64,000 nucleotides of DNA from positions 62,001-126,000 of IMG/VR virus record IMGVR_UViG_3300017987_000001. One strand, 5' to 3'. Position 1 is the first letter of the stretch; each line of letters opens with the position of its first letter. Both the position numbers and the translations under genes were made by a program. The notes under the pieces are model-generated. The model saw only the letters and a program-made list of their open reading frames with translations, was not told the origin of the DNA and did no database searches. Of the stretch, positions 46,351 to 63,447 are shown piece after piece.

Positions 46351-46695
46351 CTACTTCGCCGACGCGATGAGCGCATCGATGGCCTTGCGGACTCGATCAT
46401 TCCCGACCCGTGCAGCAGCTTCCTTCTCCTGCTGCTCAGTCTTCTGCTGCTGCGCAGCAACCTGCTCGGGCTGGGGGACGCCCAGCGCGGAGCGAAGGTC
46501 GGCTGCAGCCGACTTGGCGAGACCGGCCTTCTGGTTCGCCTCGGCAGCCTTCAGCATGGCCACGCTCTCAAGCGCAGCCTGAAGACTTTCCTGATCGGAG
46601 AACGTGAGACCGTGAGAAGCGCACTTCTGCATGAACGCAGGCAGATAGACCTCTTCAAAGAGGGCAACCTGCTCGTTCCCCGCTTCCTTGTTCAT
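46351..46695 (-). CDS. Ala-rich helical KxA-motif protein (114 aa)
   Basis: AAGGAG RBS; NKEA, QKCA, AKSA, EKEA. Confidence 0.75.
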   Translation of the reverse strand: MNKEAGNEQVALFEEVYLPAFMQKCASHGLTFSDQESLQAALESVAMLKAAEANQKAGLAKSAAADLRSALGVPQPEQVAAQQQKTEQQEKEAAARVGNDRVRKAIDALIASAK

Positions 46696-46712
46696 GGGTT
46701 CTCCTTATGCGG

Positions 46713-46742
46713 GGGAGGGCGGATCGTGTGGGCCGCCCTCCC
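46713..46742 (-). terminator. Stem-loop after the capsid gene (stabiliser or partial terminator)
   Basis: GGGAGGGCGG...CCGCCCTCCC with no U tract. Confidence 0.5.
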
Positions 46743-46755
46743 TAGCGATTGGGCC

Positions 46756-47670
46756 TTAGATGAAGTCCGCCCGAGCTACCGCCGCGACGTTGGCGACGCA
46801 GGCGCCGATGCTCTCGTACGCGAAGAACTCAAGCATGAACGCCTTGCGGTCGATGTACATCGTGGTGTCTTCGAGAACGTAGAACTTCCCGAGGAACTTC
46901 GGCTCTGCGAACATGAAGATCGTGTTGTCAGGCACGAGGTCGCGCTTGATCGTCACGATCCAGCGGACGCCGAACAGCTCGCGCTCGGCGAAGCCATTCT
47001 GCATCAGCTCCTGCGAGAGGTCGCCACCGACCTCATCGCGGCCCCACTTCACCACGTCCCAGATGGTGACGTTGTTCACGAGCACCGTGGCCGTGTTGAG
47101 GTGGTTCGGGGTGGACGGCATGATCTTCATCGCTTCCGCGATGGTGTCACGCGTCACGCCACCGTTGATCGACTTCCACTGGACGGAGCCGGTCTCGGGG
47201 ACCGCTACGTCCTGCCCAACGAGCAGCGTGTTGAGCGTGGTGATGAACTTGCCGTCCTCTTCGGCCAGCATGTCCTTGATGCTGTTGTCCGACAGGATCT
47301 GACGGATATCCATGTCGTACGTGCGCAGCTCGTCGATGTCCTTCGTGAACCGGGGCGTCATGATCCGGTCGAACATCACGCGGAAGCGCGGCCCACGGAT
47401 GTACCGGTTCATGGGGAGCGTGGCGAACGGCACCGAAATCGCCGCTGGCGACTGCGGTTCCTTGTCCACGATCTTGACCGGCTTGTCGGTGTCGACCTGA
47501 CGATCCAGCTCGTCATTGGTGATCTGCACCGGCGGGATGATCCGACGAAGGAACCCGTCTTCGCGCATCCGCACGCGGATGTACTCGTTGACGGCGTCCT
47601 GCGCGGTCTTCTCCATGCCGCTCTCAACCATGTTGAGGAACGACGCGTTGACTTCCTGAGCAGTAGGCAT
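46756..47670 (-). CDS. Major capsid protein (HK97-type fold, 304 aa)
   Basis: ATG 47670 with AAGGAG; very biased codon use; IRVRMREDGFLRRII, DMLAEEDGKF, FFAYESIG..NV capsid-like pattern; order protease-scaffold-decoration-capsid. Confidence 0.8.
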   Translation of the reverse strand: MPTAQEVNASFLNMVESGMEKTAQDAVNEYIRVRMREDGFLRRIIPPVQITNDELDRQVDTDKPVKIVDKEPQSPAAISVPFATLPMNRYIRGPRFRVMFDRIMTPRFTKDIDELRTYDMDIRQILSDNSIKDMLAEEDGKFITTLNTLLVGQDVAVPETGSVQWKSINGGVTRDTIAEAMKIMPSTPNHLNTATVLVNNVTIWDVVKWGRDEVGGDLSQELMQNGFAERELFGVRWIVTIKRDLVPDNTIFMFAEPKFLGKFYVLEDTTMYIDRKAFMLEFFAYESIGACVANVAAVARADFI

Positions 47671-47692
47671 TGAATCTCTCCTTTGTTGCCTA

Positions 47693-47739
47693 GCTGGGTT
47701 CAAGCAGGTGCTCTACTGGACCTCTACCCGAACCCAGCG
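47693..47739 (-). promoter_or_regulatory. 5' leader stem-loop of the capsid gene
   Basis: GCTGGGTTCGGGT...GCTTGAACCCAGC pairs using G-U on the coding strand. Confidence 0.5.
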
Positions 47740-47758
47740 CCCTTTCACCCAGCGACGA

Positions 47759-48274: not shown

Positions 48275-48301
48275 GTGTCAATCCTTTCGATCCTGCGCCC
48301 G

Positions 48302-48670
48302 TTACCAGCCGAGCGCTGCGAGGAACTTCTTGTCTGCCTCTTCGCGATCGGCGGAGGCGGCCTTCGTGTGCGTCTCGGCCGTCTTGCCCATCGCCGGAGG
48401 CGTGGCTTCGGCAGAAGCTGCCTTCACGTGCGTCGCGGTGCGACGCAGCGTATCGAGCGCCTTGACATGATCGTCCGTAAGGAGATCAGTCGCGGCCTGC
48501 TTCCGCTCTTCTCCGAGCAGCCCCTTCTGAATCAGGGCGTCGACAGCTTCCGCTGCGACCTTCGCCATCTGCTCGCGGTCGCTAGCCTTCTTCTGAAGCT
48601 GCTCGCCTGCCGCAGCCACGAAGTTGACCATGCGCTGGAGCAGGGCAGGATCCATTGCTACCTTTTCCAT
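48302..48670 (-). CDS. Small scaffold-like KxA protein (122 aa)
   Basis: Seven K-x-A sites; C-terminal amphipathic ADKKFLAALGW. Confidence 0.7.
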   Translation of the reverse strand: MEKVAMDPALLQRMVNFVAAAGEQLQKKASDREQMAKVAAEAVDALIQKGLLGEERKQAATDLLTDDHVKALDTLRRTATHVKAASAEATPPAMGKTAETHTKAASADREEADKKFLAALGW

Positions 48671-48697
48671 TGTTCAGCCCTTTCTTCCCTGCTGGCC

Positions 48698-50059
48698 TTA
48701 ACCGCGAACCAGCTTGCGAACGGCATCCTTCAATGCCGCCGTGCTGCCCGCTGCTGCCTTCTTCACATGAGCCGCAGGCTTGGCAGCTGCTGGCTTCTCC
48801 TCCGCCATTTCCTCTCCGGCTAGTTCCTCAGCCTCACCAGCGCCCTCTTCGGCACCACCCAGTGCAGCCTCGGCCTCGCCTTCGGATTCCATGGCTTCAG
48901 GACCAGCGCCCTGCGCCTCTGCCACGACCTCGGCCAGCTCTTCGGGCGTGATGCCTGCCTCGTCGAGTGCCTCGGCCAACGCCTCAATGACGGCTTCGTC
49001 ATCGAGCCCCTCGCCGCCCATTTCGCCGCCTTCCCCGCCCGGCATGGCCCCTTCGGGACCACCACCGGCGAGGGCGGCCAGCGCGGCAGGATCCGGAGCG
49101 CCGCCTCCACCCATCATGGCTGCGGGATCTTCTCCCCCACCCATCATGGCTTCGGGACCAGCGCCACCAGCGCCGCCTCCTCCGAGTGCACCAAGGAGTG
49201 CAGCGGGATCTTGTGCTTCCTTCGTACCAGCCTTCTTCTTCAGCTGGCCATGCATGGCCTTCTGATAGCCCTGCATGAAGCCGACGTATGCGTCAGCGTC
49301 CGCCTCGGCCGTCTTCGTGATCTCACCGACCACGGTGGCGTAGACGTCGTCGCTCGCCTGCTTCTGCTGTCCACCGGCGAGGTAGTCGATCAGCATCGAC
49401 GCTGCGACGTAACCGGCCTCCTCGTCCTCGGGGAACTTCTCGGCAGCCTTCTTGTACAGCTCAGCAGAGTCGGCTGCCGCCTGCTTGTCATCCTGCTGAG
49501 CCGCCGGAGGGTCCGACTGCTCGCCCTCCTCCGCCTTCGGTTCTTCAGCCGGAGCTTCAGCGGGCTGCTCGGCCGGAGCCTCCTCGCCTGCTGCCTTCTC
49601 CGTCGGGATGTTGAGGATCTTCGCCATCTCGCCGAGGATCGAGTTCGCTTCACCGATCAGCTGATCGGCGCCGTACTTCGTCTTCGGGTTCGGGCCGACG
49701 GCGGCGTTGCTCGCCATCGAGGGCGTGCTCTTCGGCGTGTCGACATTGCCCGCGCGCGACTCATCCGACGACATGGACTGCGTGCCCATGGTGTCGGTAG
49801 GCTTCTTCGAGTCGCCCGGGGTGTTCTTGCTACCGGACTCTTCGACATTGTTCGGCACGTCCTTGGCGACGTCGGCCGAGTTCTCCGCAGAGCGCTCGCC
49901 TTCCTTCGCAGGCTTCGTGCCGTCATCGACGTTGGCGGACGGATGCGACGACTTTCCGTCGGATGCCAAATCGAGGTTGGCTGCAGACTTCTCAAGCTGC
50001 GCACGCTCGACCATCGCGTCCATCAGCTTGAGGATGTTGCCATTGGTCTTTCCCGGCAT
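48698..50059 (-). CDS. Scaffold/prohead core protein (453 aa)
   Basis: Acidic, disordered, Ala/Gly/Glu-rich with many KxA sites; follows the protease; ATG 50059 with GGAG RBS. Confidence 0.7.
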   Translation of the reverse strand: MPGKTNGNILKLMDAMVERAQLEKSAANLDLASDGKSSHPSANVDDGTKPAKEGERSAENSADVAKDVPNNVEESGSKNTPGDSKKPTDTMGTQSMSSDESRAGNVDTPKSTPSMASNAAVGPNPKTKYGADQLIGEANSILGEMAKILNIPTEKAAGEEAPAEQPAEAPAEEPKAEEGEQSDPPAAQQDDKQAAADSAELYKKAAEKFPEDEEAGYVAASMLIDYLAGGQQKQASDDVYATVVGEITKTAEADADAYVGFMQGYQKAMHGQLKKKAGTKEAQDPAALLGALGGGGAGGAGPEAMMGGGEDPAAMMGGGGAPDPAALAALAGGGPEGAMPGGEGGEMGGEGLDDEAVIEALAEALDEAGITPEELAEVVAEAQGAGPEAMESEGEAEAALGGAEEGAGEAEELAGEEMAEEKPAAAKPAAHVKKAAAGSTAALKDAVRKLVRG

Positions 50060-50117
50060 GGCACATTCTCCCATTCGTTAGAAGGTCTGGGGCGGTCGCA
50101 GAGATTGTTGAACGCGT

Positions 50118-51587
50118 TCAACAATTGTAGTTCCTCCGGAGCATGAGCCGGTCTGCGATTCCGCCGTCTGATTCACCTTCTAGCGAGCGAGAGAACGCCA
50201 GTTGGTACGCGACATACTGTTTGGCCAGATAGGCCGCCGCTTTGTTGACGCCCGCGCGCTTCACGTGCGAGACCTTCACGGTCTTCGCAGGACCGCCACC
50301 ACGAATGATGGAGATCTGCACGCGACGACCGACCGGCTCATCCCCGAGAGACATATCGGGAACCATGCCGCCAATCATGTCGCGCACCCGCTTGGGCAGC
50401 AACCCCGCCGCCGGGTCGTATGTCTTCATCCCGGTGACGTCCTCTACCCCATCGCCGCTCGACAGCATGCGGTTGAAGATACCCGGCAACATATCCTCAG
50501 CTTCGGATACGTCACCAGCCACGGAGTCGTACTTGTTGCCAAGTATGAGCCGGAAGAAGTCTTTGATCGGCAAGCTGATCTTCGACTGCGAGAGCGCACC
50601 CATCAACTCGTTCAGATCGCAGCCGCGCATCGTGTCCAGCTGATCGTCCTTCATAGCTGGGCACTCAGCGGCAGCGTCGATCTCCGGGCTGATAGCGCGT
50701 CCCGTAGCCTCGATCTGCTTCTCCATCGCCGCCAAACGCTCCATGGCGGCAAGTTTCTCTTGGACCGGAAGGGGTGACGTGTCCAAGAGCACGTTTGTCG
50801 GGGCAGAGATGCCCCACATCTCGGCGAGCTGTGTGGAGGGAATGAACTCGTCCGGCATGACGCCGTACGCCGCGACCTTCCTCAGGCCGTAGGCGATACG
50901 ATCCGCTGGGCGGAAGACGCCGGAGTAGTCGAAGTACGTCGTCCGGTCGTTGATCGCGAAGACCTGATGACCGGCTGATTTCACGTGCGTCATCTCGTTC
51001 TTGAGATGATCACAGTACTCTTTGCGGCTGGGAGCTTGGTGCCCGCAGATGGAGCACGTGTCGTAAGGAACGCGGCAGCTCATGGAGAATGCTAGGTCTT
51101 CCCCGTTGGCTGCCTTCTCTAGCTCCGGCTCCCATTTGTCGTTCTGAACTTTGATGAGGAGTTCGCCACGACGCATTTCGGGATTGTACGCTTCGGCAAC
51201 GATCTCACCTGATGCTAGGTCCGGATCCTTATTGACGTGATCCTTATAGACCTTCGCGTACTTCGTGAATGTGTTGTGGTATTGCTGTAGGCCGCCATCG
51301 AGGATGCGCGACTTCGGTCCACCCTTCTCTGGCTCGGGGAACTCGAAGCGCGCGCTCTTCTCGTTGAAGCCATCGCCATTTCGGTTTGCGCCATACGACT
51401 CCATGCAACCCATGGAGATCGCATGAATGAAGGAGTGGCCCTTCTCTGGGCGAACCGACGATAGCTCCTTGGTTAGGACGGCGGCGCGCTTGGTCATCCA
51501 ATCACGATCGATCCCACGACTGTGTACGTCGACAAGTCGTGCGATCTGCACATTGGGACCAGCGAATGGAAATACCGTCTTGATCAT
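50118..51587 (-). CDS. Probable prohead maturation protease with Zn ribbon (489 aa)
   Basis: NRNGDGF, YKDH (candidate catalytic His), FSMSC (candidate Ser), CSIC...CDH, F.D.SGVFRPAD: the HK97/assemblin-like motif order; synteny agrees. Confidence 0.7.
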   Translation of the reverse strand: MIKTVFPFAGPNVQIARLVDVHSRGIDRDWMTKRAAVLTKELSSVRPEKGHSFIHAISMGCMESYGANRNGDGFNEKSARFEFPEPEKGGPKSRILDGGLQQYHNTFTKYAKVYKDHVNKDPDLASGEIVAEAYNPEMRRGELLIKVQNDKWEPELEKAANGEDLAFSMSCRVPYDTCSICGHQAPSRKEYCDHLKNEMTHVKSAGHQVFAINDRTTYFDYSGVFRPADRIAYGLRKVAAYGVMPDEFIPSTQLAEMWGISAPTNVLLDTSPLPVQEKLAAMERLAAMEKQIEATGRAISPEIDAAAECPAMKDDQLDTMRGCDLNELMGALSQSKISLPIKDFFRLILGNKYDSVAGDVSEAEDMLPGIFNRMLSSGDGVEDVTGMKTYDPAAGLLPKRVRDMIGGMVPDMSLGDEPVGRRVQISIIRGGGPAKTVKVSHVKRAGVNKAAAYLAKQYVAYQLAFSRSLEGESDGGIADRLMLRRNYNC

Positions 51588-51683: not shown

Positions 51684-52625
51684 CTAGACTGTCGGCCGCG
51701 CCCACGTCGGAAGTTCAAGCGGCTTGCCCTCTTCCGCGTACGCGCGGAATGGATCGAACGAGGGGCGACGAGGAAGCCGCTGCGCCTGCATCGCGCGGGC
51801 CTTCTCGGCGCGCATGAGCCGCGCCATCCACAGGTCAGCCTCGAACTGCCGCAAGCGCTGCTGCAGCTGCGTCTGTGCATCGGCGACAGACGAGCCGCCC
51901 GGACCATACCGAATCCGATTGCCTACGTAGCGTAGGATATCAGGCAGGAACATCGCAGCGATACCGGCAAGCCCACCGCGCTTGAGCGACGATGCGAGCG
52001 GCTTCGAGCTGGCCACGGTCTTCGCGGCTGCACGCATACGCTCGGGAGAAACCTTCTTGAGCGCGGACTGCAACTGAGGTGTCATGGACTTCGTAGCCTG
52101 CGCGAGTCGGCGCTTACGCAGCCACGGCCCAACGACGGGGATACTGTAGAGTCGACTACCGCTTCCCAGTACGTTCGACAGCTCTTTCTTCGAGAGGCCG
52201 GTCTTCGGGTTCGTGAGTGCCTCAGCGAGCGACAGAGTCTTCTTCTTGCCCGCAGCAAGCGTCGGGAGATCGGCACCGCGCAGCGCACCGCTGACAGTCT
52301 CGGCGAGCTGCGACTGCGTCATGGGGGAGAGTGTGCTGTGCAGCCCCCACGGCGTCGTGCGATAACCGTACGCCGCGCCCATACCAGCACCGGCTGCGGC
52401 AAGTCCGGGCATCAGATACTCGCGCGGCGGGTTCTTCTGCGTCTCGCGAATGTACTGAATGCCTTGCGGGATCTCTTCCAAACCACGTCGCAGTCGCCGA
52501 TTCAGCTCGCGCTGCGCATCCTGCGACTGCGTGAGGCTCAGATCTTGCCCAGTCCACATACCGGTCTGGGCTTCCTTCTCCATGCCAAATCGCGCGGCGG
52601 TGAACTTGTCGCCAAGCTCGCTCAT
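51684..52625 (-). CDS. Basic Gly-zipper membrane-type protein with N-terminal FGMEKEA (313 aa)
   Basis: ATG 52625 with GAGGAG; GLAAAGAGMGAAYG and GGLAGIAAMFLP segments. Confidence 0.7.
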   Translation of the reverse strand: MSELGDKFTAARFGMEKEAQTGMWTGQDLSLTQSQDAQRELNRRLRRGLEEIPQGIQYIRETQKNPPREYLMPGLAAAGAGMGAAYGYRTTPWGLHSTLSPMTQSQLAETVSGALRGADLPTLAAGKKKTLSLAEALTNPKTGLSKKELSNVLGSGSRLYSIPVVGPWLRKRRLAQATKSMTPQLQSALKKVSPERMRAAAKTVASSKPLASSLKRGGLAGIAAMFLPDILRYVGNRIRYGPGGSSVADAQTQLQQRLRQFEADLWMARLMRAEKARAMQAQRLPRRPSFDPFRAYAEEGKPLELPTWARPTV

Positions 52626-52626
52626 C

Positions 52627-53604
52627 CTATACTCCTCGTCCACGCGAAATGGCGAGATCCATCATCCGTGCGATGTCTGGATCGTTCGCATACAGATCCA
52701 TAAGCGGATTGCCCTTGCCCTTCACGGGCCGCGCAATAACCTCTTGCAGGAACTTGCGCATACGCGCGATCTCCTCGCGATTGCCGCCGAAGCGTCCGGT
52801 GAGAAGACCAACCCGCTGCGAGAAGTCGAGCGCGGACATCTTGCCACGCGCGAAGTCGCGCTTCAGCTTCGCGAGTCCTTCGAGCTGCGGAGCCGCCTGT
52901 CGGTAGATGTTCAGTCGGTTGGAGATGCGACGACCGAGCGCGGCAAGCGCCATGCGCTGCTCTGGTGTGCGCAGCTGCCCCGCTTCAATGCGCTGAATCG
53001 CATGCTCAACTGCTGCCTTCATATCCACATCGGGCATGACAGCGCGCATCGTACGAAGCCCGCGCAACGCGGCAGAAGGACTGCGGCTCATCAGCTTCTT
53101 CGCCGTGCGCTCGCCCAAGCGTATGCGCCGCTTCCAGCCCTTGCCGCTCGGCAGGACCGACTGCGTGAACTGCTGCACGAGTGACTGTTGCTCTTCCGGC
53201 GTGAAGCGACCGCGCCCAGCGAGAAGTGCTCCGAGTGCGCCTTCCGTCGCGCCCTCGAACACATCACCTTCACCGCTCACAAGTCGTCCGAGTGCGCCTT
53301 GGACCCCCGACTCATACGCCTTGCCGAGCTGCAGTCCGCGCTGAATCGGATTGGCGAGCGCATAGGCTGCCGTCGCGCCGGTGCCAAGACCACCCTTGAG
53401 CGCACCCGCAAGTGTGCCCGAAAGGATATCGCCGCCAGTAAGAAGCGCCTTACCGGCTCCGAGACCAGCGCCAGCCAACCCGCCAACGCCGCCGAGCCCG
53501 AGTGACTTCAAAAGCAGGTTCGGATCGACCTGCGGATCGAACTCGATGTCTTTCGCGTGTGTTGGCTCCGGAGGAAGCGTACCCGGAACAGGCTTCTCGG
53601 GCAT
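52627..53604 (-). CDS. Gly-zipper protein (325 aa)
   Basis: LGLGGVGGLAGAGLGAG..GTLAGALKGGLGTG hairpin followed by a basic helical domain. Confidence 0.7.
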   Translation of the reverse strand: MPEKPVPGTLPPEPTHAKDIEFDPQVDPNLLLKSLGLGGVGGLAGAGLGAGKALLTGGDILSGTLAGALKGGLGTGATAAYALANPIQRGLQLGKAYESGVQGALGRLVSGEGDVFEGATEGALGALLAGRGRFTPEEQQSLVQQFTQSVLPSGKGWKRRIRLGERTAKKLMSRSPSAALRGLRTMRAVMPDVDMKAAVEHAIQRIEAGQLRTPEQRMALAALGRRISNRLNIYRQAAPQLEGLAKLKRDFARGKMSALDFSQRVGLLTGRFGGNREEIARMRKFLQEVIARPVKGKGNPLMDLYANDPDIARMMDLAISRGRGV

Positions 53605-56100: not shown

Positions 56101-56297
56101 ACCTTCATAGCCGGACGCGTGATGAGGTCCGTCCTTTCGAAGTTCCGGCGACGGTGATTGCTGCGCATGCCGTCACGGCGCGGGATGAGCGCCGACGGCT
56201 CCTTGCTGAGCGGCTCCGCCGCACAGCCCAGTGCCGCTCGCTTGAGCAGCCCGAGCTGATATCCTATATCATAAGCTACGTTAGTCTCCACCGCCAC
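56097..56297 (-). CDS. Small protein consisting mostly of the targeting-like motif AYDIGYQLGLLKRA (66 aa)
   Basis: Fills the gap, coupled to neighbours, shares a motif with the 57880 and 59841 genes. Confidence 0.65.
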   Translation of the reverse strand: MAVETNVAYDIGYQLGLLKRAALGCAAEPLSKEPSALIPRRDGMRSNHRRRNFERTDLITRPAMKV

Positions 56298-57609
56298 CCC
56301 CCAGCAGCCGCTGAATCAGTGCGATCGCCAGAAGCGTGCCGAGCGTGAGACCGCCGCCTCCCACGAGCTTGCTGATCGTCGGATCGTCCGACCACTTACC
56401 GAGGGTCGACCGTGCACCTTCCCAGCCCATGCCACCGAGCAGGTCGCCCAGCCCGGACATGCCGGTGCTGCCGACATCGCCAAGGAAGCCGCCAAACTGC
56501 CCAAGATCGCCGAAGCCGGACCCACCTGCAGCGCGGGCGTTCATGATCTGCGCGACCTCGGGGCTGGCCATGGTCGTAGGCGCTGCGCCGCCCTCAAGCA
56601 GCTTGGAGAGTCCGTAGCCGCCTCCAAGAACGCCAGCGGCAGCGCCGCCGCCGTACTTCGCCTTCTGCCACGGCGTAAGCCCGCCCCACCACTGGGCAGC
56701 CCCTCCGGGCGCAGCTGCGGCCTGAAGCACGGCCTCAGGGACCGGCGCTCCAGCGATGGTTTGCAGCGTAGGGTCTGCTGTCCCCACGCGGGTAGCGGGA
56801 CCGCTAGGTCGCGCCTGCCGTCTGGTCACTTTGGGCGATTGAAACTTCCGCCTCGGCTTTGGCGTTGGCTTCGGCTTCGCTTTCCCGCCAAAGATGCGCG
56901 ACCAGCCCTCGCGAAACTTCTTGGTGCTACCCACCATCGCGCGTCCAGCAGCTTCCTTGGCCGTCTCGTTCTCGCTCGTCTTCGGCTCGGGCTTCTTCTC
57001 CGGAGCCTTCTTCGGCTTCTCGTCCGACGCGGATTCGAGCTTCTCGACACCCGGCTTCGTCGGCTTCTGTGTTTCCTTCGACTTCGTGTCGCGCGTCACG
57101 TCGTGGATGCCACCGATCTTGTTCAGCACGTTGCGCACGCTCGCCGTCGTCACCTTCGGAGGCGTCGCGGGAGCTGCCTTCGCGGGCGTCATCTTCGGCA
57201 TCGCCGCGAGGCCGCCCGGCGGACCCTTCGGAGTGGCCGTCGGCTTGGGTGCAGGCGGCTTCGGTACTGCCGGAGTCTTCGGAGCTGCCGCAGGAGCGGG
57301 CTGTGCGGGTTGCGCCGGAGGCACAGCGCCTGCGCTCATCTTCTCAAGTGCCTCATTGATAGCCGAGGCCGAGACGTTCAGCCGTCGTGGGGCGTTCGTG
57401 CTCAGGTTCAGCTGAGGGACCATGCCCTTGGTCGGGCCGCGTGCAGGAGGAGCGTTCTCAATAACGCGAGGGCGCCCGGGGCCGCGTACCGTACCGGCAA
57501 TCGCGGGCACCGACGTGTTCTTGGTCGCCGGAACGGTCGTCTTCGTAGCCTCATCCGCCTTCTTGGTGAAGGCATTGACGAGTACGCGACGTGCCTTAAT
57601 CAGATCCAT
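56281..57609 (-). CDS. Pro/Lys-rich disordered protein with C-terminal Gly-zippers (442 aa)
   Basis: GAGGAGG RBS; AFTKKA, LEKMSA, KEAA; two hydrophobic Gly-rich helices. Confidence 0.7.
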   Translation of the reverse strand: MDLIKARRVLVNAFTKKADEATKTTVPATKNTSVPAIAGTVRGPGRPRVIENAPPARGPTKGMVPQLNLSTNAPRRLNVSASAINEALEKMSAGAVPPAQPAQPAPAAAPKTPAVPKPPAPKPTATPKGPPGGLAAMPKMTPAKAAPATPPKVTTASVRNVLNKIGGIHDVTRDTKSKETQKPTKPGVEKLESASDEKPKKAPEKKPEPKTSENETAKEAAGRAMVGSTKKFREGWSRIFGGKAKPKPTPKPRRKFQSPKVTRRQARPSGPATRVGTADPTLQTIAGAPVPEAVLQAAAAPGGAAQWWGGLTPWQKAKYGGGAAAGVLGGGYGLSKLLEGGAAPTTMASPEVAQIMNARAAGGSGFGDLGQFGGFLGDVGSTGMSGLGDLLGGMGWEGARSTLGKWSDDPTISKLVGGGGLTLGTLLAIALIQRLLGGGGGD

Positions 57610-57880
57610 CGTTTTCCTCCTCAGCGACAGCGGAGACCTTCGCGATCAGATCCATGAGAGGAACCTGATACTCCGGGTCATCCTCCAGCAGTTTACGCTC
57701 GTTCCGAACGTGATCGGCCAGCTCGGAGTAATCACGAAGCAGCTCATCTGCCGCTTCCGCCATGTGCCCCATGCACAGCCAGAAATGCTCCGGGTACCCC
57801 TGCTTCGACTCGTGCAGAAGGATCTCCGCCTGTGCGAGATGCTTCCGTGCGCAGTTCAGGCAACTCGGGCGCATAGTCAC
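57596..57880 (-). CDS. Small Cys/His helical protein (94 aa)
   Basis: CLNCARKH...H..C.GH..EA.DE, possibly a metal site. Confidence 0.7.
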   Translation of the reverse strand: MTMRPSCLNCARKHLAQAEILLHESKQGYPEHFWLCMGHMAEAADELLRDYSELADHVRNERKLLEDDPEYQVPLMDLIAKVSAVAEEENDGSD

Positions 57881-59358
57881 TAGAACCCTACCGTGGTCTC
57901 TGAACCCTTGTGCGCCTCAAGCAGCTCCTTCGTCAGATCTTCCGGCGATGCCTTCTCTACAGGCCCGCGCGTTGACTTCTCGCCCTTCTGCGCCGGGAAA
58001 TGCATCCCCTGCTGCTGCTCCAGTCGCTGATTGAGCTGCTTGATCAGCGCCTTCTGCTCCTCTGGCGTCATCGCGTTGATTTCGTCCATCGATGGCATTC
58101 CCGCCGATTCCGAGATGGACGTTTCTGCCTCCGCCTTTGGCGGCTTCTTCGGACCGGCAGGCTCATCGTGCTGCTTTGCCGCGCCCGGAGGTGCAACTGT
58201 CGCAGCCTCTGCAGCCTCGGCACGACCAGCGACCGACTCTTCTGCCGCTGGCGCTTCTTCCGGTGCCGCCTTCGGTGCTTCTTCCGCAGGAGCCTCACCA
58301 GCGCCCTCGCCCCTGCCCTTGAGGTAATCATAGAGACCATAGCCGCCCGCGCCAACACCAGCACCGGTCAGGATGCTGAGCAGGAAGTTGCGCTTCCGCT
58401 TTGCCGCCTGCTCGGGCGTCTCATCCTCACCGCCACCGAGCATGCCGGGAAGCCCGGCAAGAAGTCCAAGGCCGCCACCGAGTCCACCGCCGACCAGATA
58501 CGGTCGGATCTTCTGCAGCAGCCCGCTCCAGTCGAGCGCGCGCTTCACCATGCCGAGCTTCGCGCCGACATCGAACGCGGTCTTGGGGTCCATGTTGTGG
58601 CTCGCATTCTTCATGAGTTCACGAACGAGAATCGGGAGGCCGCCCATGGTGCCTGCGCCGAGCGCACCGCCACTCAACGCTGCGATAAGTGGCACGCCGT
58701 ACGACTGGAAGTTCGTCGGCGCGAGATCTTGGTAGAGCGCCTCTTGCCGCGCGGGGTCATCGGGATGCGAGAGCGCTGCCTGCCGTCGCGCGCGTGCCTT
58801 GTTCTCAGGAACACTGAGCGCGGTAAGGCCGCCCAGTCCACCCGCACCGAGAAGCGCACCAATGATCGTGCGGCTCGTATCATCCTCCAGCAGCTTACCG
58901 ATATCGAGAGCTTTCTTTTGCATAGGTACTCCAGCTGACTGAGACTTCCCAAACAACTCCGGCAGCTTCTCCATATGGAGGCGAAGATCCGTCTTGTCCC
59001 CGAAATCGGGAAGCTCTGGGACATTCGGAAGCGGGTACATCGGTCCCGTTCCCATCGACTCTCGGAAGCGCTTCACCCAGCTGAGATCCTTGAGCGGCTG
59101 CACTGCCTTGTCAAAGCCGCCACCGGCCAGATACCCACCGCCGATACCAAGCCCCGCCCCAGCAAGGATACCAGCAAGGTCACCGGCAGACATCTGATCA
59201 CCATGGAACTTCGCCATCTGCTCGGCGGCTTCCGGATTATCCCGGAGAATCTCCTTGATGCGTTCTCGATTCTGCTTGCGACGACGATGCACGAGATACG
59301 TCATCAGCCCAGCGCCGCCAACGCCGCCGAGAAGTGCTCCCAGATTCTCAGACTTCAT
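57880..59358 (-). CDS. Polyprotein-like protein with three Gly-zipper hairpin modules separated by KxA sites (492 aa)
   Basis: Three pairs of GxxxG helices; QKKA, MKNA and AFDVGAKLGMVKRA fall at module boundaries. Confidence 0.75.
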   Translation of the reverse strand: MKSENLGALLGGVGGAGLMTYLVHRRRKQNRERIKEILRDNPEAAEQMAKFHGDQMSAGDLAGILAGAGLGIGGGYLAGGGFDKAVQPLKDLSWVKRFRESMGTGPMYPLPNVPELPDFGDKTDLRLHMEKLPELFGKSQSAGVPMQKKALDIGKLLEDDTSRTIIGALLGAGGLGGLTALSVPENKARARRQAALSHPDDPARQEALYQDLAPTNFQSYGVPLIAALSGGALGAGTMGGLPILVRELMKNASHNMDPKTAFDVGAKLGMVKRALDWSGLLQKIRPYLVGGGLGGGLGLLAGLPGMLGGGEDETPEQAAKRKRNFLLSILTGAGVGAGGYGLYDYLKGRGEGAGEAPAEEAPKAAPEEAPAAEESVAGRAEAAEAATVAPPGAAKQHDEPAGPKKPPKAEAETSISESAGMPSMDEINAMTPEEQKALIKQLNQRLEQQQGMHFPAQKGEKSTRGPVEKASPEDLTKELLEAHKGSETTVGF

Positions 59359-59365: not shown

Positions 59366-59382
59366 TCCAGACAGGCAGGCAG
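59366..59382. repeat. 17-bp inverted repeat, left arm TCCAGACAGGCAGGCAG
   Basis: Exact reverse complement of 59824-59840. Confidence 0.9.
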
Positions 59383-59388
59383 TGCCTG

Positions 59389-59802: not shown

Positions 59803-59823
59803 GACTGCCTGCCTTCTATCTGT

Positions 59824-59840
59824 CTGCCTGCCTGTCTGGA
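59824..59840. repeat. 17-bp inverted repeat, right arm CTGCCTGCCTGTCTGGA
   Basis: Exact reverse complement of 59366-59382. Confidence 0.9.
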
Positions 59841-60545
59841 CTACTTGAGCGCTATCGGGTCTAGCGCGGTACGAACGTTCGTTGCAATGTTCTCAATACC
59901 CTTTCCGACACCATAACCGAGCAGTCGGCCGCCACCGTAACCAAGCGCGCCGTAACCAAGCCCCTTCAGCGGCACACCGATGAGATCCTTCCAGACTGGT
60001 CGGCGCACCTTAGAGTACAGCGCTTTGGCTCGCGCCTTGTCGCCGCCGCTCGCAATAAAGGCCATACGCCGATCAGCTTTCCGTCGGCTAAGTGCGTGCA
60101 TCAGCGCGGCAAGAAGTCCGTAGGTTCCGGCCACTCCACCATACAACTTGCCGGTACTCTGCGACATGCGAGTACTAAGCCGCTCAGGAACAGGACGCAG
60201 TTCGGGTTCGGGCTTGGGCGCGGCTGGTGCGGCTGGTGCGGGCGTACCAGCCTCAGCGGACTGGGAGAACATCGCTTTTAGCGCATCCAAGTATCCGCCA
60301 TCCGGAGCGAGCTTGTCTTTGTAGATTGCAGGAGTGAGTGCAGTGCCGCCGAGACCGCCTACCGCACCGCCGATCATTGCGTTGCGTAGGATCTTCGAGA
60401 GCTTGTCCTTCTTCGAGAATAGGCCAGTCAGCGCGCCAAGCCCGGCACCCCCGAGCGTCGTCATCAACGGGATGCTCGATGGGTTGATCTCCGCGCGCTT
60501 CGTGAGTCCAACCATGTAGCCGAGCGCGATCGCTTGATTCGACAT
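59841..60545 (-). CDS. Two-module Gly-zipper protein with N-terminal AIALGYMVGLTKRA (234 aa)
   Basis: ATG 60545 with AAGGAG; four Gly-rich hydrophobic helices. Confidence 0.75.
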   Translation of the reverse strand: MSNQAIALGYMVGLTKRAEINPSSIPLMTTLGGAGLGALTGLFSKKDKLSKILRNAMIGGAVGGLGGTALTPAIYKDKLAPDGGYLDALKAMFSQSAEAGTPAPAAPAAPKPEPELRPVPERLSTRMSQSTGKLYGGVAGTYGLLAALMHALSRRKADRRMAFIASGGDKARAKALYSKVRRPVWKDLIGVPLKGLGYGALGYGGGRLLGYGVGKGIENIATNVRTALDPIALK

Positions 60546-60554
60546 TGCCACTCC

Positions 60555-62897
60555 TTAGAGGATCTGCTCCAGCTCTGCCTCAGCCGTCGCGTCGCTGACG
60601 TCCGGCTCGATGGTCTTCTGCTTCAGGAACAGCGTCAGGTCGCCGAGGTTCTCGAACACGTTGTTGAGGTTGTCCTCAAGCTCCGGCATGTCCTGCGAAC
60701 CGTAGCGATCCTTGAACTTATCGAAGTGCCAGTAGTACATGAACTTGATCCGACCAATGCGATCGAGGCCGAGCATCAGATCGCTGAGGTACTGATCGAC
60801 GACAGTGTTCGGATCCATCGACTTCACAAGCCCGGAGATCACGCTCGTGTCGAGCACTTCCTTCTGCCCCTGCGCAGCGGCCTGCTGCGCTTGGAACGTC
60901 GCGTCCATGTCCATCGTCGTCGCGCCGTAGCGATCGAGTGGGGTCTCGTTCGCCGAGACAAGCTCGTCCTGCGGATACATGACGCGCGGGTTCGTGAAGA
61001 GCGTCGGGTCGGTCGACGTCATCGGCTCCTGCAGCGCAGGTGCGAAAGGCTGCGCGTGCTTGACGAAGAACTTCGGTGAGCCGCTGCGGCGAGCCTGCTT
61101 CAGGATGCCATCGGCGTCGGCTTCGCGCATGCGATAGTCGATAACGAGCTTCTTGAGCGCGGCAATCTTGCTCATCGGACGTCCGATGTTGCCATTATCG
61201 CGCACCCACCACTCGATGCCGTCGGTGACGGCCTGAATCTCGCGGACGTTCGCACTCTTGAAGATGCTCAGCTCGATCTCGGCGATCGACTGTGGTGTGG
61301 CCATATCGTCCAGTTCGGCCTTGCGCCGCTTCTCTTCTCTGCGCGCCCAGTCGCTATCGGGGCGATCGAGCTTCCACGGCTCGATCATATCCTTCGACAG
61401 CTTGATGACCTTGAAGCCGTTCGGCACGAAGTAGTCGCTGCCGATCTGCGTGATGTTGTTGCCGGGCTTGTTCGTGATGACCATGCACTTATCGTAGCGT
61501 CCGCCGCCCTCAACGATGTTGTCGTAGCGACTGTACTTCGCATCCGACACATTGAAGGTCTGCCCACGATACGGCGGATAGAGCAGCTTCTTCATCTTCT
61601 CGTCGGCGTTGCGTGCGCGCGGCCAGTTGTCGAACTCGCCGTAGAGCGTGGTCCGGCCGTCTGCAACAACGCGGCGCTCGACGAAGAACGGTACGGAGCC
61701 ATCACCCTTCTCGTTGACGAAGATGACCTTCTGCCGCTCGGACACAGAGCTGGGAGCGGGAAGACCGTCGAAGACCTTCTTCCATTCGTCGAACTTGTGA
61801 CCCTCATTATCGACGAAGACGTTCTCCTTGTTCGTCGTCATCATGCGCCCGGACTTCGGGTCGACCACGGTCACGTTCCCGCGATCGTAGTCATACATGC
61901 ACTCGGCACCCTTGGGGTCGAGCATGACGAGCCGCTGCTGATACGAGCCATCAGCCATGAGCACGCGACAGTACGAACTGCAGTGAGGGTTCTGCAGCGT
62001 CTGCGAGATGCGCGTCGAGTAGACCGTCGAGGTCTCGTCATCTCCACGATTGTCGCGCACGACATAGCGATCACGCTGGAGGCGCTCCTTCTCGTCCTCG
62101 CTCAGCATCGTGTCATCGAGATCGAGCACGTTCGCACGATCGGCGATCATGATCTGGACGTCGGGAGCCGTGTCCTCGATCATCTTGTCGCCGTCAGCCG
62201 CCTTCTTCTCCATGGGTTCGGCGACAAAGGCTTCCTTCGCTGCTTCGAGGATAGCATCCATGTCGTAGATGCTGAGCAGACTGTCGGTGAATGCCGCGTT
62301 CTTGCGCATCGTAGCGAGCAGCACACGTGCAGCGCTCCAGCCAGCATCCTTGATGAAGCTTGGGAGATCCCACTTGTCGCGCAGCGCCGCGCGCTTCTCG
62401 CCGCCCGGGGGGCTCATGATGACGTGCAGGAAGGGCTTGAAGTCGTCGGCTATCGTGGAGGACAGGTAGTCCGTCAAGCCACGCAGCGACTGATCGCTCG
62501 CATACTTCGACCCGGTGTACGGGGGCCGAGCCATCGCGTTGAAGTCGGGCTGCTGGATACCCATCTCGCCCGGCGTCATCTCCTCGGTCTCGCCGAGAAT
62601 ATGCGGACGACGGTTGAGGAGGTAGTTGATCCAGTTCTCCTGCAGCGGAACGAAGGCGTCCTGACTCTTCAGGTAGAGCAGGTCGTCGCCCTTCAGCTGA
62701 CCGTTGAGGAAGAAGACGGGGGCGTACATCCACTCGTCCCCGACGCTGAAGCCCCACACACCGACGGCGTGCGTGTTGTCTTCGCTCTTATCGAGGAGCT
62801 GGAAACCTACCAGATGGTCCAGCAGGCCGGGCGCGCGGTCACGAAGGCGAGCGTGCGCGAGGTCAGCGAATGTTCGTTCGAATTCTGCATCTGGCAT
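60555..62897 (-). CDS. Large multidomain head-associated protein (780 aa)
   Basis: Long ORF with RBS; KxA sites (SKYA, EKRA, EKKA, FKSA, VKHA) at apparent domain boundaries. Confidence 0.7.
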   Translation of the reverse strand: MPDAEFERTFADLAHARLRDRAPGLLDHLVGFQLLDKSEDNTHAVGVWGFSVGDEWMYAPVFFLNGQLKGDDLLYLKSQDAFVPLQENWINYLLNRRPHILGETEEMTPGEMGIQQPDFNAMARPPYTGSKYASDQSLRGLTDYLSSTIADDFKPFLHVIMSPPGGEKRAALRDKWDLPSFIKDAGWSAARVLLATMRKNAAFTDSLLSIYDMDAILEAAKEAFVAEPMEKKAADGDKMIEDTAPDVQIMIADRANVLDLDDTMLSEDEKERLQRDRYVVRDNRGDDETSTVYSTRISQTLQNPHCSSYCRVLMADGSYQQRLVMLDPKGAECMYDYDRGNVTVVDPKSGRMMTTNKENVFVDNEGHKFDEWKKVFDGLPAPSSVSERQKVIFVNEKGDGSVPFFVERRVVADGRTTLYGEFDNWPRARNADEKMKKLLYPPYRGQTFNVSDAKYSRYDNIVEGGGRYDKCMVITNKPGNNITQIGSDYFVPNGFKVIKLSKDMIEPWKLDRPDSDWARREEKRRKAELDDMATPQSIAEIELSIFKSANVREIQAVTDGIEWWVRDNGNIGRPMSKIAALKKLVIDYRMREADADGILKQARRSGSPKFFVKHAQPFAPALQEPMTSTDPTLFTNPRVMYPQDELVSANETPLDRYGATTMDMDATFQAQQAAAQGQKEVLDTSVISGLVKSMDPNTVVDQYLSDLMLGLDRIGRIKFMYYWHFDKFKDRYGSQDMPELEDNLNNVFENLGDLTLFLKQKTIEPDVSDATAEAELEQIL

Positions 62898-62949
62898 TTC
62901 AGATCCCCTTCGGCCAGCTAGTAGAGCGCGTAGCTACCCGCCAGCGTCC

Positions 62950-63447
62950 TTACGTGTACATCATCGTGTCTGTCGGCGACTTCCGACCCGGAAGCTGCGG
63001 CATCGGCATCTTCGTCTTCCCGCGTGTGGCTTCAGCGATGACCGACTCAGGCGCTTCATCGTAGCCCTCGTCGGGGAACATCTCCTTGCCCTGAGTGACG
63101 TTGGTCATCATCTTGTCGCGCGCCTTGAGGCCGCGCATCAGCTTCGCCATCGTCGGCATGAACGACATCTCTTCGAGCGGCATCCCCATACGACGACCCT
63201 GCTCCAGCTCGTGCTGCGAGAAGGTCGGCCGCTGCTGCTGACGATAGAGCCACGGGCGCACAGTCTCCGGAGCCTTGGAGAACCACTGCTTCACGGCTTC
63301 TTCTTCAGTCATCTCCGGCTCGGCGGGCTGCTGCGGCTGAGCGGTCTGCTGCGCAGCCTGATCCTTCTTACCGCCCCCGAACAGGCTCGAAATCAGTCCG
63401 AGCAACCATGTGCCGAGGTCGAAGCTTTCCTTTACGAGCGGCTCCAT
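62950..63447 (-). CDS. Met/Pro/Gln-rich protein with N-terminal hydrophobic helix (165 aa)
   Basis: AAGGAG RBS; LVKES followed by FDLGTWLLGLISSLFGGG. Confidence 0.65.
   Translation of the reverse strand: MEPLVKESFDLGTWLLGLISSLFGGGKKDQAAQQTAQPQQPAEPEMTEEEAVKQWFSKAPETVRPWLYRQQQRPTFSQHELEQGRRMGMPLEEMSFMPTMAKLMRGLKARDKMMTNVTQGKEMFPDEGYDEAPESVIAEATRGKTKMPMPQLPGRKSPTDTMMYT

What the first reader, a model, noticed from the sequence alone, without database searches (positions are those of the whole stretch)
46351..63447. K-x-A 'zip code' on nearly every head-region protein: a candidate lysine-directed capsid cargo targeting and processing system
Seen: K-x-A(A/S/G) recurs densely in the capsid N-terminus (GMEKTA), both scaffold-like proteins (7 sites in 122 aa), the protease itself (TKRAA, RKVAA, VKRAG) and almost all upstream ORFs, typically near N-termini or at domain boundaries. 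Tail and fibre proteins show no such enrichment. Known: T4 gp21 and phiKZ gp175 prohead proteases cut many internal head proteins at short motifs ending in Glu. Inference: the Zn-ribbon protease at 50118-51587 cleaves after K-x-A, a different specificity, and about 15 otherwise unrelated proteins are packaged and matured through this motif.
Basis: partly seen in the sequence, partly recalled or inferred. Interest (0 to 1): 0.85.

Follow-up and report, generated by a model that had tools for sequence, protein, structure and literature searches.

The report
Predicted head-protease cutting motif, Φ-x-K-x-A
A short motif (hydrophobic-x-Lys-x-Ala) marks the scaffold, capsid and internal head proteins of this giant phage and its distant relatives, and is most likely the cutting signal of an unusual head-maturation protease, so head cargo could be predicted from sequence alone.

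Summary
K-x-A is the most over-represented of all 400 one-gap residue pairs in the head region (82 seen, 47 expected, z 5.1). It is not enriched at other spacings or in the tail module. The sharper motif is hydrophobic-x-K-x-A, usually followed by A or S: 50 seen against 12 expected (z 11) in the head region, 18 against 13 elsewhere.

"Nearly every protein" is overstated. Six proteins carry many sites: three scaffold-like proteins, the protease, a 389-aa protein and a 780-aa protein. Another seven, including the capsid protein, carry one to three, mostly within the first 35 residues. Seven carry none.

The same protein families carry the motif in six distant metagenomic relatives, Salmonella phage Arash and Vibrio phage D181 (260 against 59, z 28); the protease homologue of Bacillus phage G carries seven.

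The gene at 50118-51587 folds like T4 gp21 and has an invariant His and Ser. An invariant L-x-K-V-A sits in its disordered inter-domain linker.

Best reading: this is the recognition motif of a divergent, Zn-ribbon-bearing prohead protease. It works like T4 L-x-E or phiKZ A-x-E, with a different code. Cleavage itself, the scissile bond and any targeting role are not shown. It is a new variant of a known kind.

The parts
50118..51587 (-). Putative prohead maturation protease, 489 aa. The true start is the ATG at 51587, not the TTG at 51638. It has an N-terminal protease-fold domain (residues 1-227), a disordered linker (228-246) and a helical C-terminal domain (250-489).
   Evidence: About 370 homologues, mostly near 489 aa. 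AlphaFold2 pLDDT is 86 for the full length and 89 for the domain alone. The top Foldseek PDB hit is T4 gp21, 5JBL, probability 0.96-0.99. BFVD hits are prohead proteases, COG3740 and DUF2213 proteins. PHROG 18299 'head maturation protease' matches weakly. It carries 9 K.A against 2.8 expected.
51237..51239 (-). His117, candidate catalytic histidine.
   Evidence: Invariant in 73 homologues. Coordinates checked. The catalytic role is inferred.
51084..51086 (-). Ser168, candidate catalytic serine, 51 residues after His117.
   Evidence: Invariant in 73 homologues. Coordinates checked. The role is inferred.
51006..51056 (-). Zn-ribbon-like insert, C178-x2-C181 ... C192-x-H194, inside the protease domain.
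   Evidence: C178, C181 and C192 are invariant and H194 is present in at least 90% of homologues. Sequence checked.
50871..50885 (-). L235-R-K237-V-A239, a predicted self-cleavage site in the inter-domain linker.
   Evidence: K237 and A239 are invariant in 73 of 73 homologues and L235 is present in at least 90%. It lies in the only segment with pLDDT below 50, residues 228-246.
51483..51497 (-). M31-T-K33-R-A35, a predicted N-terminal self-processing site of the protease.
   Evidence: K-x-A is in this column in 70 of 73 homologues. K33 is invariant.
46756..47670 (-). Major capsid protein, 304 aa. Homologues begin at the ATG at 47670.
   Evidence: PHROG 2522 major head protein, E 5.5e-8. There are 1932 homologues. 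Arash gp226 'major capsid protein' is 31% identical.
47602..47616 (-). M-E-K-T-A, the single capsid-protein site, about 20 residues from the true N-terminus, between a variable N-terminal peptide and the conserved DAVNEYIRVRMREDGF segment.
   Evidence: The site is present in all 8 aligned orthologues, including Arash. It is present in 113 of 120 homologues as Φ-x-K-x-A and in 6 more as K-x-A. The rest of the protein holds only 0.04 K.A per homologue.
48698..50074 (-). 458-aa acidic, Ala-rich scaffold-like protein directly downstream of the protease, with 15 K.A.
   Evidence: 15 against 6.6 expected, z 3.8. Sites at K29 and K254 are shared by 7 of 7 orthologues. Synteny is conserved in all relatives.
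48302..48670 (-). 122-aa scaffold-like helical protein, with 7 K.A and 6 refined sites.
   Evidence: 7 against 2.8 expected, z 3.2. Sites are listed. The positions are not conserved in orthologues.
46351..46695 (-). 114-aa Ala/Lys/Gln-rich protein downstream of the capsid gene, with 5 K.A.
   Evidence: 5 against 1.9 expected, z 2.6. The K24 site (F-M-Q-K-C-A) is shared by 7 of 7 orthologues.
54080..55249 (-). 389-aa protein with the highest site load, 17 K.A and 10 refined sites. Candidate core or scaffold protein that is cut into small peptides.
   Evidence: 17 against 5.4 expected, z 5.7. Orthologues have z 2.2-4.6. K35 is shared by 7 of 7, including Arash gp220.
60555..62897 (-). 780-aa conserved head-module protein. 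It is a portal candidate by size and position only. It has 12 K.A in two clusters, residues 131-232 and 547-613.
   Evidence: 12 against 3.7 expected, z 4.5. The 107 homologues average 10.2 K.A against 4.3 expected, with conserved columns 131, 168, 183, 231, 577, 600 and 613. No portal family match was found.
51684..52643 (-). 319-aa Gly-rich protein with one N-terminal site, F-G-M-E-K23-E-A. Candidate internal or ejection protein with a propeptide.
   Evidence: The genes directly upstream of the protease in the relatives all carry a site at residues 5-16, although BLAST finds no similarity to this protein.
53607..54077 (-). 156-aa protein with one N-terminal site, L-F-E-K11-D-A.
   Evidence: The orthologue in L005 keeps the site at residue 10 (L-F-T-K-D-A). 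Orthologues in L006 and L008 have K-x-A at residues 15 and 13.
56281..57609 (-). 442-aa Pro/Ala/Lys-rich protein with one N-terminal refined site, A-F-T-K16-K-A.
   Evidence: It is not enriched overall.
59841..60551 (-). 236-aa Gly-zipper protein with one N-terminal site, G-L-T-K18-R-A.
   Evidence: Weak match to Pfam Gly-zipper_YMGG.
57880..59358 (-). 492-aa Gly-rich protein with three internal refined sites, at K148, K250 and K272.
   Evidence: 3 against 1.1 expected, not significant on its own.
56097..56297 (-). 66-aa ORF with one site, G-L-L-K19-R-A. Whether it is a real gene is uncertain.

Best explanation
The head module encodes a divergent prohead (capsid-maturation) serine protease at 50118-51587. 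It has a fold like T4 gp21 and the herpesvirus assemblins, a Zn-ribbon insert and a helical C-terminal domain. Its recognition motif is G/x-Φ-[E/Q/T]-K-x-A-[A/S].

Shown here:
- The motif is strongly and specifically enriched in head-module proteins.
- It is conserved in position where a single cut would matter: the capsid N-terminus, the protease linker and the N-termini of internal proteins.
- In the scaffold-like proteins it is kept in number across relatives, and in the 122-aa one the positions move.
- It is found with this protease family across very distant phages.

Inferred: the protease co-assembles into the procapsid and then does four things. It cuts itself at K33-x-A35 and at the linker L-x-K237-V-A239. 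It trims about 20 residues from the capsid protein. It removes short N-terminal propeptides from several Gly-rich internal or ejection-type proteins. It cuts the scaffold or core proteins (46351, 48302, 48698, 54080) into small peptides that leave the head.

The i, i+2, i+4 spacing of Φ, K and A fits an extended strand lying in a protease groove. The scissile bond is undetermined. It is either after Lys (Φ at P3 and K at P1, as in HK97 F-N-K|S and, with the charge reversed, T4 L-x-E|) or after Ala (K at P3 and A at P1, followed by A or S, as at herpesvirus A|S sites).
For: Statistics in the window:
- K.A ranks 1 of 400 gap-1 pairs in the head region, with no enrichment at other spacings or in the tail module.
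- The refined motif has z 11.2 in the head region and 1.3 elsewhere. N-terminal placement is 11 of 20 proteins against 1.7 expected.

Method control:
- The same scan on the T4 scaffold gp22 returns the known gp21 motif L-x-E as rank 1 (10 against 3.3, z 4.1). K.A is not significant there.

Relatives:
- Head modules of 8 relatives (protease identity 65% down to about 30%, including cultured phages Arash and D181) give 260 sites against 59.2 expected (z 28).
- 55 of their 99 proteins have an N-terminal site against 8.5 expected.
- Other genes in the same loci give 25 against 22.3.
- Phage G gp19, a protease homologue annotated as a head maturation protease (bioRxiv 10.1101/2024.12.16.628780), has 7 sites, z 6.9.

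Site conservation:
- The capsid site is kept in 119 of 120 homologues.
- Protease K237 is kept in 73 of 73 and K33 in 70 of 73.
- Lysines inside K.A are more conserved than other lysines, 0.45 against 0.32, P 0.002.

Protease identity:
- Top PDB fold hit is T4 gp21. BFVD hits are prohead proteases.
- H117 and S168 are invariant.
- The gene lies between the large head-module gene and the scaffold and capsid genes.
- The invariant linker motif falls in the only disordered segment.

Footprint:
- Pro is excluded at positions -1, +1 and +3. Gly is favoured at -3 and A or S at +3.
Against: - No cleavage has been observed. There are no peptide-level or N-terminal data for any member. The Arash virion proteome reports only coverage and calls gp222 a 'structural protein'.
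- The protease assignment rests on fold and weak profile hits. There is no Pfam hit, no PDB sequence hit, hhalign against HK97 gp4 found nothing, and the full-length model found nothing in the PDB.
- The catalytic residues were not mapped onto a solved active site.
- Some conserved sites lie inside folded regions (protease K77, K109, K158; the 780-aa protein), where conservation could be structural.
- Two proteins start M-x-K-x-A, where a cut would remove only 3-5 residues.
- Repeats in the Arash and D181 scaffold proteins mean their site counts are not all independent.
- The phage G capsid protein has no site.
Confidence: 0.72

Rival explanations
1. The motif is a docking or assembly signal that is not cleaved. 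A short strand-forming peptide would bind the procapsid interior, the scaffold or the protease's C-terminal domain and recruit proteins into the head. This is a pure 'zip code'.
For: Eleven of 20 head proteins have the motif in the first 40 residues. Two start M-x-K-x-A, where cutting achieves little. The i, i+2, i+4 spacing fits β-augmentation as well as a protease groove.
Against: Ten to 17 copies in scaffold-like proteins, and an invariant copy in the protease's own disordered linker, fit degradation and self-processing better. The T4 control shows that a known cleavage motif gives exactly this signature. In T4 the targeting sequence and the cleavage site coincide, so the two roles need not exclude each other.
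Confidence: 0.12
2. The motif is cleaved, but by another protease, either a host enzyme or a second phage enzyme, and not by the product of 50118-51587.
For: One relative (L006) has a Peptidase_S8 gene in its head module. Staphylococcal phage 80α uses a host protease (own knowledge).
Against: No other protease family was found in the window's head region. The motif occurs with this protease family across hosts as different as Planctomycetota-associated samples, Salmonella, Vibrio and a Bacillus-group host. The protease itself carries the invariant sites.
Confidence: 0.05
3. The motif marks lysines for a modification, such as methylation, acylation or isopeptide cross-linking, rather than for proteolysis.
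For: An invariant Lys in a short sequence context is typical of modification sites. HK97-type capsids cross-link through Lys (own knowledge).
Against: No transferase was detected in the head module. The sites are concentrated in scaffold-like proteins and N-terminal peptides, not in the mature capsid body, which is nearly free of K.A.
Confidence: 0.04
4. The signal is a by-product of composition, helical periodicity or shared ancestry and repeats, with no function of its own.
For: The enriched proteins are rich in Ala, Lys and Glu and are helical. Arash and D181 scaffold proteins contain internal repeats.
Against: The shuffles preserve each protein's composition. Only spacing i+2 is enriched, not i+1, i+3 or i+4. 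The motif recurs in protein families that are unrelated to one another, and in same-position genes with no detectable similarity. The tail module is at expectation.
Confidence: 0.02

Closest known systems
T4 gp21 prohead protease and its L/I-x-E cleavage motif (scaffold gp22, capsid gp23, internal proteins with N-terminal capsid-targeting sequences)
   Same: It is the best solved fold match. The protease gene lies next to the scaffold and capsid genes. A short motif is dense in scaffold proteins and single near the N-termini of the capsid and internal proteins. The same statistical signature appears in the control. Self-processing is expected in both.
   Different: The key residues are Lys and Ala, not Glu. 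The protease is 489 aa, with a Zn-ribbon insert and a large helical C-terminal domain. There is no sequence-profile match to Pfam protease families.
phiKZ gp175 and SPN3US gp245 giant-phage proteases with the S/A/G-x-E motif (PMC5694885, PMC10052503)
   Same: A jumbo-phage head with many internal or ejection-type proteins processed at a three-residue-spaced motif. Relatives carry multisubunit RNA polymerase genes beside the head module, and in Arash these proteins are found in virions.
   Different: The motif is different. No detectable sequence relation to that protease group was found, and cleavage here is only predicted.
HK97 gp4 protease cutting the capsid protein gp5 at F-N-K|S
   Same: The sequence before HK97's mature Ser104 reads T-F-N-K (the position of the mature N-terminus is from established knowledge). 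That matches Φ-x-K and gives a precedent for Lys at P1.
   Different: HK97 has no Ala at +2 and no separate scaffold or internal proteins. hhalign finds no relation between the two proteases.
Herpesvirus assemblin (maturation and release sites, V/L-x-A|S)
   Same: The same fold superfamily appears lower in the hit list (1AT3 and 1VZV). Ala at P1 followed by Ser or Ala would match the K-x-A|[A/S] register. The protease is fused to a scaffold-like C-terminal domain and released by self-cleavage.
   Different: The fold match to the herpes enzymes is weak (probability 0.18). Lys at P3 and a hydrophobic residue at P5 are not part of the herpes consensus (own knowledge).

Membership tests
Prohead/capsid-maturation serine proteases with the assemblin-like fold (T4 gp21, HK97 gp4, phiKZ gp175, herpes assemblin) | Assemblin or gp21-like fold of the catalytic domain. 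| tested here: met
   The domain model (pLDDT 89) has T4 gp21 5JBL as its top three PDB hits, probability 0.96-0.99 and target TM 0.54-0.62. BFVD hits are named prohead protease, COG3740 or DUF2213, E 1e-3 to 1e-6. E-values against the PDB are only about 0.01.
Prohead/capsid-maturation serine proteases with the assemblin-like fold (T4 gp21, HK97 gp4, phiKZ gp175, herpes assemblin) | Conserved catalytic His and Ser. | tested here: inconclusive
   H117 and S168 are invariant in 73 homologues and lie 51 residues apart. They were not superposed on a solved active site, because no coordinates or residue-level alignment were available.
Prohead/capsid-maturation serine proteases with the assemblin-like fold (T4 gp21, HK97 gp4, phiKZ gp175, herpes assemblin) | Sequence-profile membership of a curated protease family (Pfam Peptidase_S77, S78 or S80, or DUF2213). 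| tested here: not met
   No Pfam hit for the window protein or for any of 73 homologues. Only weak matches to PHROG 18299 'head maturation protease', E 2e-6 to 8e-3. No PDB sequence hit.
Prohead/capsid-maturation serine proteases with the assemblin-like fold (T4 gp21, HK97 gp4, phiKZ gp175, herpes assemblin) | Gene placed in the head module, next to the scaffold and major capsid genes. | tested here: met
   The order protease, scaffold-like 458 aa, 122 aa, 171 aa, capsid is conserved in six metagenomic relatives, and Arash and D181 show the same general order.
Prohead/capsid-maturation serine proteases with the assemblin-like fold (T4 gp21, HK97 gp4, phiKZ gp175, herpes assemblin) | Proteolytic activity on head proteins. 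| not testable with these tools
   It needs expression or virion mass spectrometry.
Motif-directed head processing systems (T4 L/I-x-E; phiKZ/SPN3US S/A/G-x-E) | A short motif enriched in scaffold or core proteins, and single near the N-termini of capsid and internal proteins. | tested here: met
   The positive control on T4 gp22 is.
Motif-directed head processing systems (T4 L/I-x-E; phiKZ/SPN3US S/A/G-x-E) | The motif ends in Glu at P1. | tested here: not met
   The enriched pair is K.A with a hydrophobic residue at -2. Glu is favoured only at -1.
Motif-directed head processing systems (T4 L/I-x-E; phiKZ/SPN3US S/A/G-x-E) | Mature N-termini mapped at the motif. | not testable with these tools
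   The Arash proteome paper and its supplement hold no peptide-level data.
Portal protein (for the 780-aa ORF at 60555-62897) | Sequence or fold match to a portal family. | tested here: not met
   No hit in the phage database, PHROGs or Pfam, none to phage G portal gp14, none in the atlas, and none in the precomputed Pfam of 120 homologues. Its fold was not modelled.

The most novel reading that the evidence does not exclude
A large, mostly uncultured clade of 170-210 kb phages, together with Arash, the D181-like Vibrio phages and, more distantly, phage G, shares a previously unannotated subfamily of prohead protease. The subfamily carries a Zn ribbon and has its own substrate code, Φ-x-K-x-A-[A/S]. 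The code would both mark proteins for the head interior and direct their processing. If so, the full set of packaged and ejected proteins of these phages could be read from sequence, and the specificity would be a new class within the assemblin-like protease superfamily.
Probability: 0.5. Interest if true: 0.7.

Novelty: new variant of a known kind. Interest (0 to 1): 0.6.

Why it matters
Motif-directed head maturation is known experimentally from only a few model phages: T4, phiKZ/SPN3US, HK97 and the herpesviruses. This is a sequence-derived substrate code for a protease subfamily that current annotation misses. Arash gp222 is listed only as 'structural protein', and no Pfam family matches.

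The subfamily has hundreds of homologues in metagenomes. The code allows sequence-based prediction of which head-module proteins are scaffold, which carry propeptides and which are probably internal or ejected cargo. It can be tested directly in a cultured phage, Arash on Salmonella.

It would also extend the range of specificities known for the assemblin-like fold, and it provides a simple statistical method for finding such motifs, validated here on T4.

Tried and rejected
- Sequence searches of the protease against Pfam and PDB sequences found nothing useful. The only PDB 'hits' were designed coiled coils matching the L-x-K-x-A linker by chance.
- Foldseek of the full-length model against the PDB found nothing. 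Only the domain-only model found T4 gp21.
- hhalign of the family profile against HK97 gp4 showed no relation.
- The portal assignment of the 780-aa protein is unsupported by tblastn, PHROGs, Pfam, comparison with the phage G portal, the atlas and homologue annotations. I call it only a portal candidate.
- The Arash paper and supplements have no protease annotation and no peptide-level data.
- Literature searches for a K-X-A prohead motif or Lys-directed prohead cleavage found no precedent in the searchable library. Subscription papers were not covered.
- Helical or compositional artefact was rejected, because only the i+2 spacing is enriched.
- I could not decide the scissile bond from the footprint.
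- Sequencing-run tools were not used, because they do not bear on proteolysis.

Full report
**Source and layout.** The window is part of IMGVR_UViG_3300017987_000001, a 207,857-bp viral contig. Almost all genes lie on the minus strand. Positions 1-46334 hold a contractile-tail module, with a tail sheath at 21363-24278 and a baseplate wedge at 4401-6056. The finding's range holds the head module:
- the major capsid protein at 46756-47670 (PHROG 2522; 304 aa in homologues);
- a conserved 171-aa protein;
- two small and one large Ala/Lys/Glu-rich scaffold-like proteins;
- the 489-aa Zn-ribbon protein at 50118-51587;
- about ten further ORFs, several of them Gly-rich;
- a conserved 780-aa protein at 60555-62897.

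**Check of the observation.** I shuffled each protein's residues to keep its composition.
- K-x-A in the 21 head-region ORFs is 82 against 47.1 expected (z 5.1). It is the most over-represented of all 400 one-gap pairs.
- KA, K-xx-A and K-xxx-A are at expectation. The 41 ORFs outside the head region give 49 against 47.3.
- This spacing specificity rules out local Ala/Lys richness and α-helical periodicity.
- By protein, the excess lies in six ORFs: 46351 (5 against 1.9), 48302 (7 against 2.8), 48698 (15 against 6.6), the protease (9 against 2.8), 54080 (17 against 5.4) and 60555 (12 against 3.7).

**Refined motif.**
- The flanks show a hydrophobic residue (L, M, F, I, V or H) two positions before the Lys, E, Q or T just before it, and A or S after the Ala.
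- [LMFIVWH]-x-K-x-A occurs 50 times against 12.0 expected in the head region (z 11.2), and 18 against 13.2 elsewhere.
- Eleven of 20 head proteins have it within the first 40 residues, against 1.7 expected. They include the capsid protein (M-E-K-T-A) and several otherwise unenriched ORFs: 51684, 53607, 56281, 59841 and 56097.
- Seven ORFs have none, so 'nearly every' is too strong.
- Pro is excluded at -1, +1 and +3, and Gly is favoured at -3. The footprint is about eight residues.

**Control.** The same pair scan on the T4 scaffold gp22 returns the experimentally known gp21 motif L-x-E as rank 1 (10 against 3.3, z 4.1). K-x-A is not significant there or in HK97 gp4 and gp5. The method therefore recovers a true prohead-protease motif, with an effect of similar size.

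**Relatives.**
- The 489-aa protein has about 370 homologues, mostly near 489 aa. Several lie on contigs of 170-212 kb, some carry inteins, and some come from assemblies labelled Phycisphaerae.
- I fetched six such loci, with protease identity 40-65%. I also fetched the regions of Salmonella phage Arash, Vibrio phage D181 and Bacillus phage G that tblastn found, at about 30% identity.
- The same protein families are enriched in every one of the six metagenomic loci, and Arash and D181 show even sharper motifs, such as E-M-E-K-A-A-S and T-L-T-K-E-A-S.
- Pooled over eight relatives (phage G not included), head-module genes hold 260 refined sites against 59.2 expected (z 28), and 55 of 99 proteins have an N-terminal site against 8.5 expected. 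Other genes in the same loci give 25 against 22.3.
- Phage G gp19 is a 300-aa homologue annotated elsewhere as a head maturation protease (bioRxiv 10.1101/2024.12.16.628780). It has 7 sites (z 6.9), although the phage G capsid protein has none.

**Site conservation.**
- The capsid site is present in all eight aligned orthologues. Among 120 homologues, 113 have Φ-x-K-x-A and 6 more have K-x-A. It sits at residues 16-32, at the junction of a variable N-terminal peptide and the conserved DAVNEY... segment. The rest of the capsid protein is almost free of K-x-A, 0.04 per protein.
- In the protease family K237-x-A239 is present in 73 of 73 sequences and K33-x-A35 in 70 of 73. The family averages 10.4 K-x-A against 3.4 expected.
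- The 780-aa family averages 10.2 against 4.3, with seven conserved columns.
- Lysines inside K-x-A are more conserved than other lysines, 0.45 against 0.32, P 0.002.
- The genes immediately upstream of the protease in the relatives have no BLAST similarity to window ORF 51684. All of them nevertheless carry a site within residues 5-16.
- The scaffold-like proteins keep their site density across relatives. Positions are not conserved in the 122-aa protein, while some are shared in the 458-aa and 389-aa proteins. Moving sites fit substrates that only need to be cut somewhere.

**What the 489-aa protein is.**
- Sequence libraries say little. There is no Pfam or PDB sequence match, and only weak matches to PHROG 18299 'head maturation protease'.
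- The AlphaFold2 model (pLDDT 86) shows an α/β N-terminal domain (1-227), one disordered segment (228-246) and a helical C-terminal domain.
- The full-length model found nothing in the PDB. It did find many proteins named prohead protease, COG3740 or DUF2213 in BFVD, plus phage G gp19, phiRSL1 and PaBG proteins.
- The domain-only model (pLDDT 89) has the T4 gp21 capsid assembly protease (5JBL) as its top three PDB hits, probability 0.96-0.99 and target TM 0.54-0.62. Herpesvirus proteases appear further down.
- H117 and S168 are invariant and 51 residues apart. C178, C181, C192 and H194 form a Zn-ribbon-like insert.
- The invariant L-x-K237-V-A239 lies in the disordered linker. That is where a self-cleavage site separating a protease domain from a scaffold-like or targeting domain would be expected, as in herpes assemblin.

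**Mechanism proposed.**
- Shown: the motif statistics, the conservation, the association with this protease family, the protease fold and the linker placement.
- Inferred: the protease co-assembles in the procapsid and cuts itself at K33 and K237. It trims about 20 residues from the capsid protein. It removes N-terminal propeptides from internal or ejection-type proteins. It cuts the four Ala/Lys/Glu-rich proteins into small peptides, as T4 gp21 does to gp22.
- The Φ, K, A spacing (i, i+2, i+4) fits a substrate strand with alternate side chains in enzyme pockets.
- The scissile bond cannot be read from sequence. It could be Φ-x-K|x-A. That register has precedent: the HK97 gp5 sequence reads T-F-N-K before the known mature Ser104 (plus established knowledge), and T4 L-x-E| has a hydrophobic P3. 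It could instead be K-x-A|[A/S], as at herpes A|S sites. I weight the two about equally.
- The 'zip code' idea, targeting as distinct from processing, is compatible with the N-terminal placement but untested.

**Rivals.**
- A non-cleaved docking motif is the main rival.
- Cleavage by another protease is weakened because no other protease family was found in the window's head region and the association holds across unrelated hosts.
- Lysine modification has no supporting enzyme in the head module.
- A compositional or ancestry artefact is rejected.

**Comparison and novelty.** Functionally this looks like the T4 and phiKZ/SPN3US systems (PMC5694885, PMC10052503), with a different code and a structurally elaborated protease. 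I found no paper describing a K-x-A-type prohead motif or annotating this protease subfamily beyond a label on phage G gp19. The searchable library is incomplete. I rate it a new variant of a known kind.

**Limits.**
- No proteolysis data exist for any member.
- The catalytic residues are not structurally verified.
- The portal assignment of the 780-aa ORF is unsupported.
- Start codons of some ORFs are uncertain, which slightly affects the N-terminal distances.
- Homologue counts are not phylogenetically independent.

Noticed in passing
window 42538-45534 (-): A 998-aa protein with about 55 tandem copies of a 10-residue G-P-T-G-D-P-S-x-I-T unit, a collagen-like Gly-x-x pattern, between two similar N-terminal domains and a C-terminal domain. 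It is probably a fibre. It overlaps the upstream 1378-aa ORF by about 90 nt.
   Followed up: no
homologues of window 50118-51587 (P0008, P0010, P0011, P0021, P0057, P0066 and others): Several protease homologues are about 860-890 aa and carry intein, Hint or LAGLIDADG domains (PF14890, PF14528, PF13403, PF05203/4). Inteins have therefore invaded this protease gene repeatedly.
   Followed up: no
L006 71-1942, L007 885-2729, L009 4636-6456 (Arash gp216): Relatives encode a multisubunit RNA polymerase β'-like fragment (PF04998) just upstream of the head module. In Arash the RNA polymerase subunits are among the most abundant virion proteins (PMC10585845). This suggests a packaged RNA polymerase, as in phiKZ-like phages.
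   Followed up: partly
window 47759-48274 (-): A conserved 171-aa protein directly upstream of the capsid gene has no K-x-A at all. It sits where phage G has its 165-aa capsid decoration protein gp26. It is a candidate external decoration protein, which would not be exposed to an internal protease.
   Followed up: partly
window 51684-53604, 56281-60551 (-): Five head-module proteins are rich in Gly-zipper or GxxxG-like hydrophobic stretches (for example LGGVGGAGL, and a weak match of 59841 to PF13441). They look like membrane-active internal or ejection proteins. Four have a single N-terminal motif site.
   Followed up: partly
L006 5003-6007: One relative carries a subtilisin-like Peptidase_S8 gene inside its head module. 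No counterpart was found in the window.
   Followed up: no
window 46756-47670 and its 120 homologues: The mature part of the capsid protein is almost free of K-x-A, at 0.04 per protein where composition predicts about 0.8. This is possible avoidance of the motif, but the homologues are closely related, so the test is weak.
   Followed up: partly
window 46333-47673 (+), 47708-48823 (+), 49211-50146 (+): Long plus-strand ORFs of 311-446 aa lie antisense to the capsid, scaffold and neighbouring genes. At about 60% G+C they are most likely shadow ORFs and not genes.
   Followed up: no
L009 13404-14171 (Arash gp223), L011 13274-14083 (D181): The scaffold-like proteins of Arash and D181 contain internal tandem repeats, each carrying two motif copies (…E-L-V-K-E-A-S…D-L-E-K-x-A-A-V…). 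Sites seem to have multiplied by duplication of a module.
   Followed up: no
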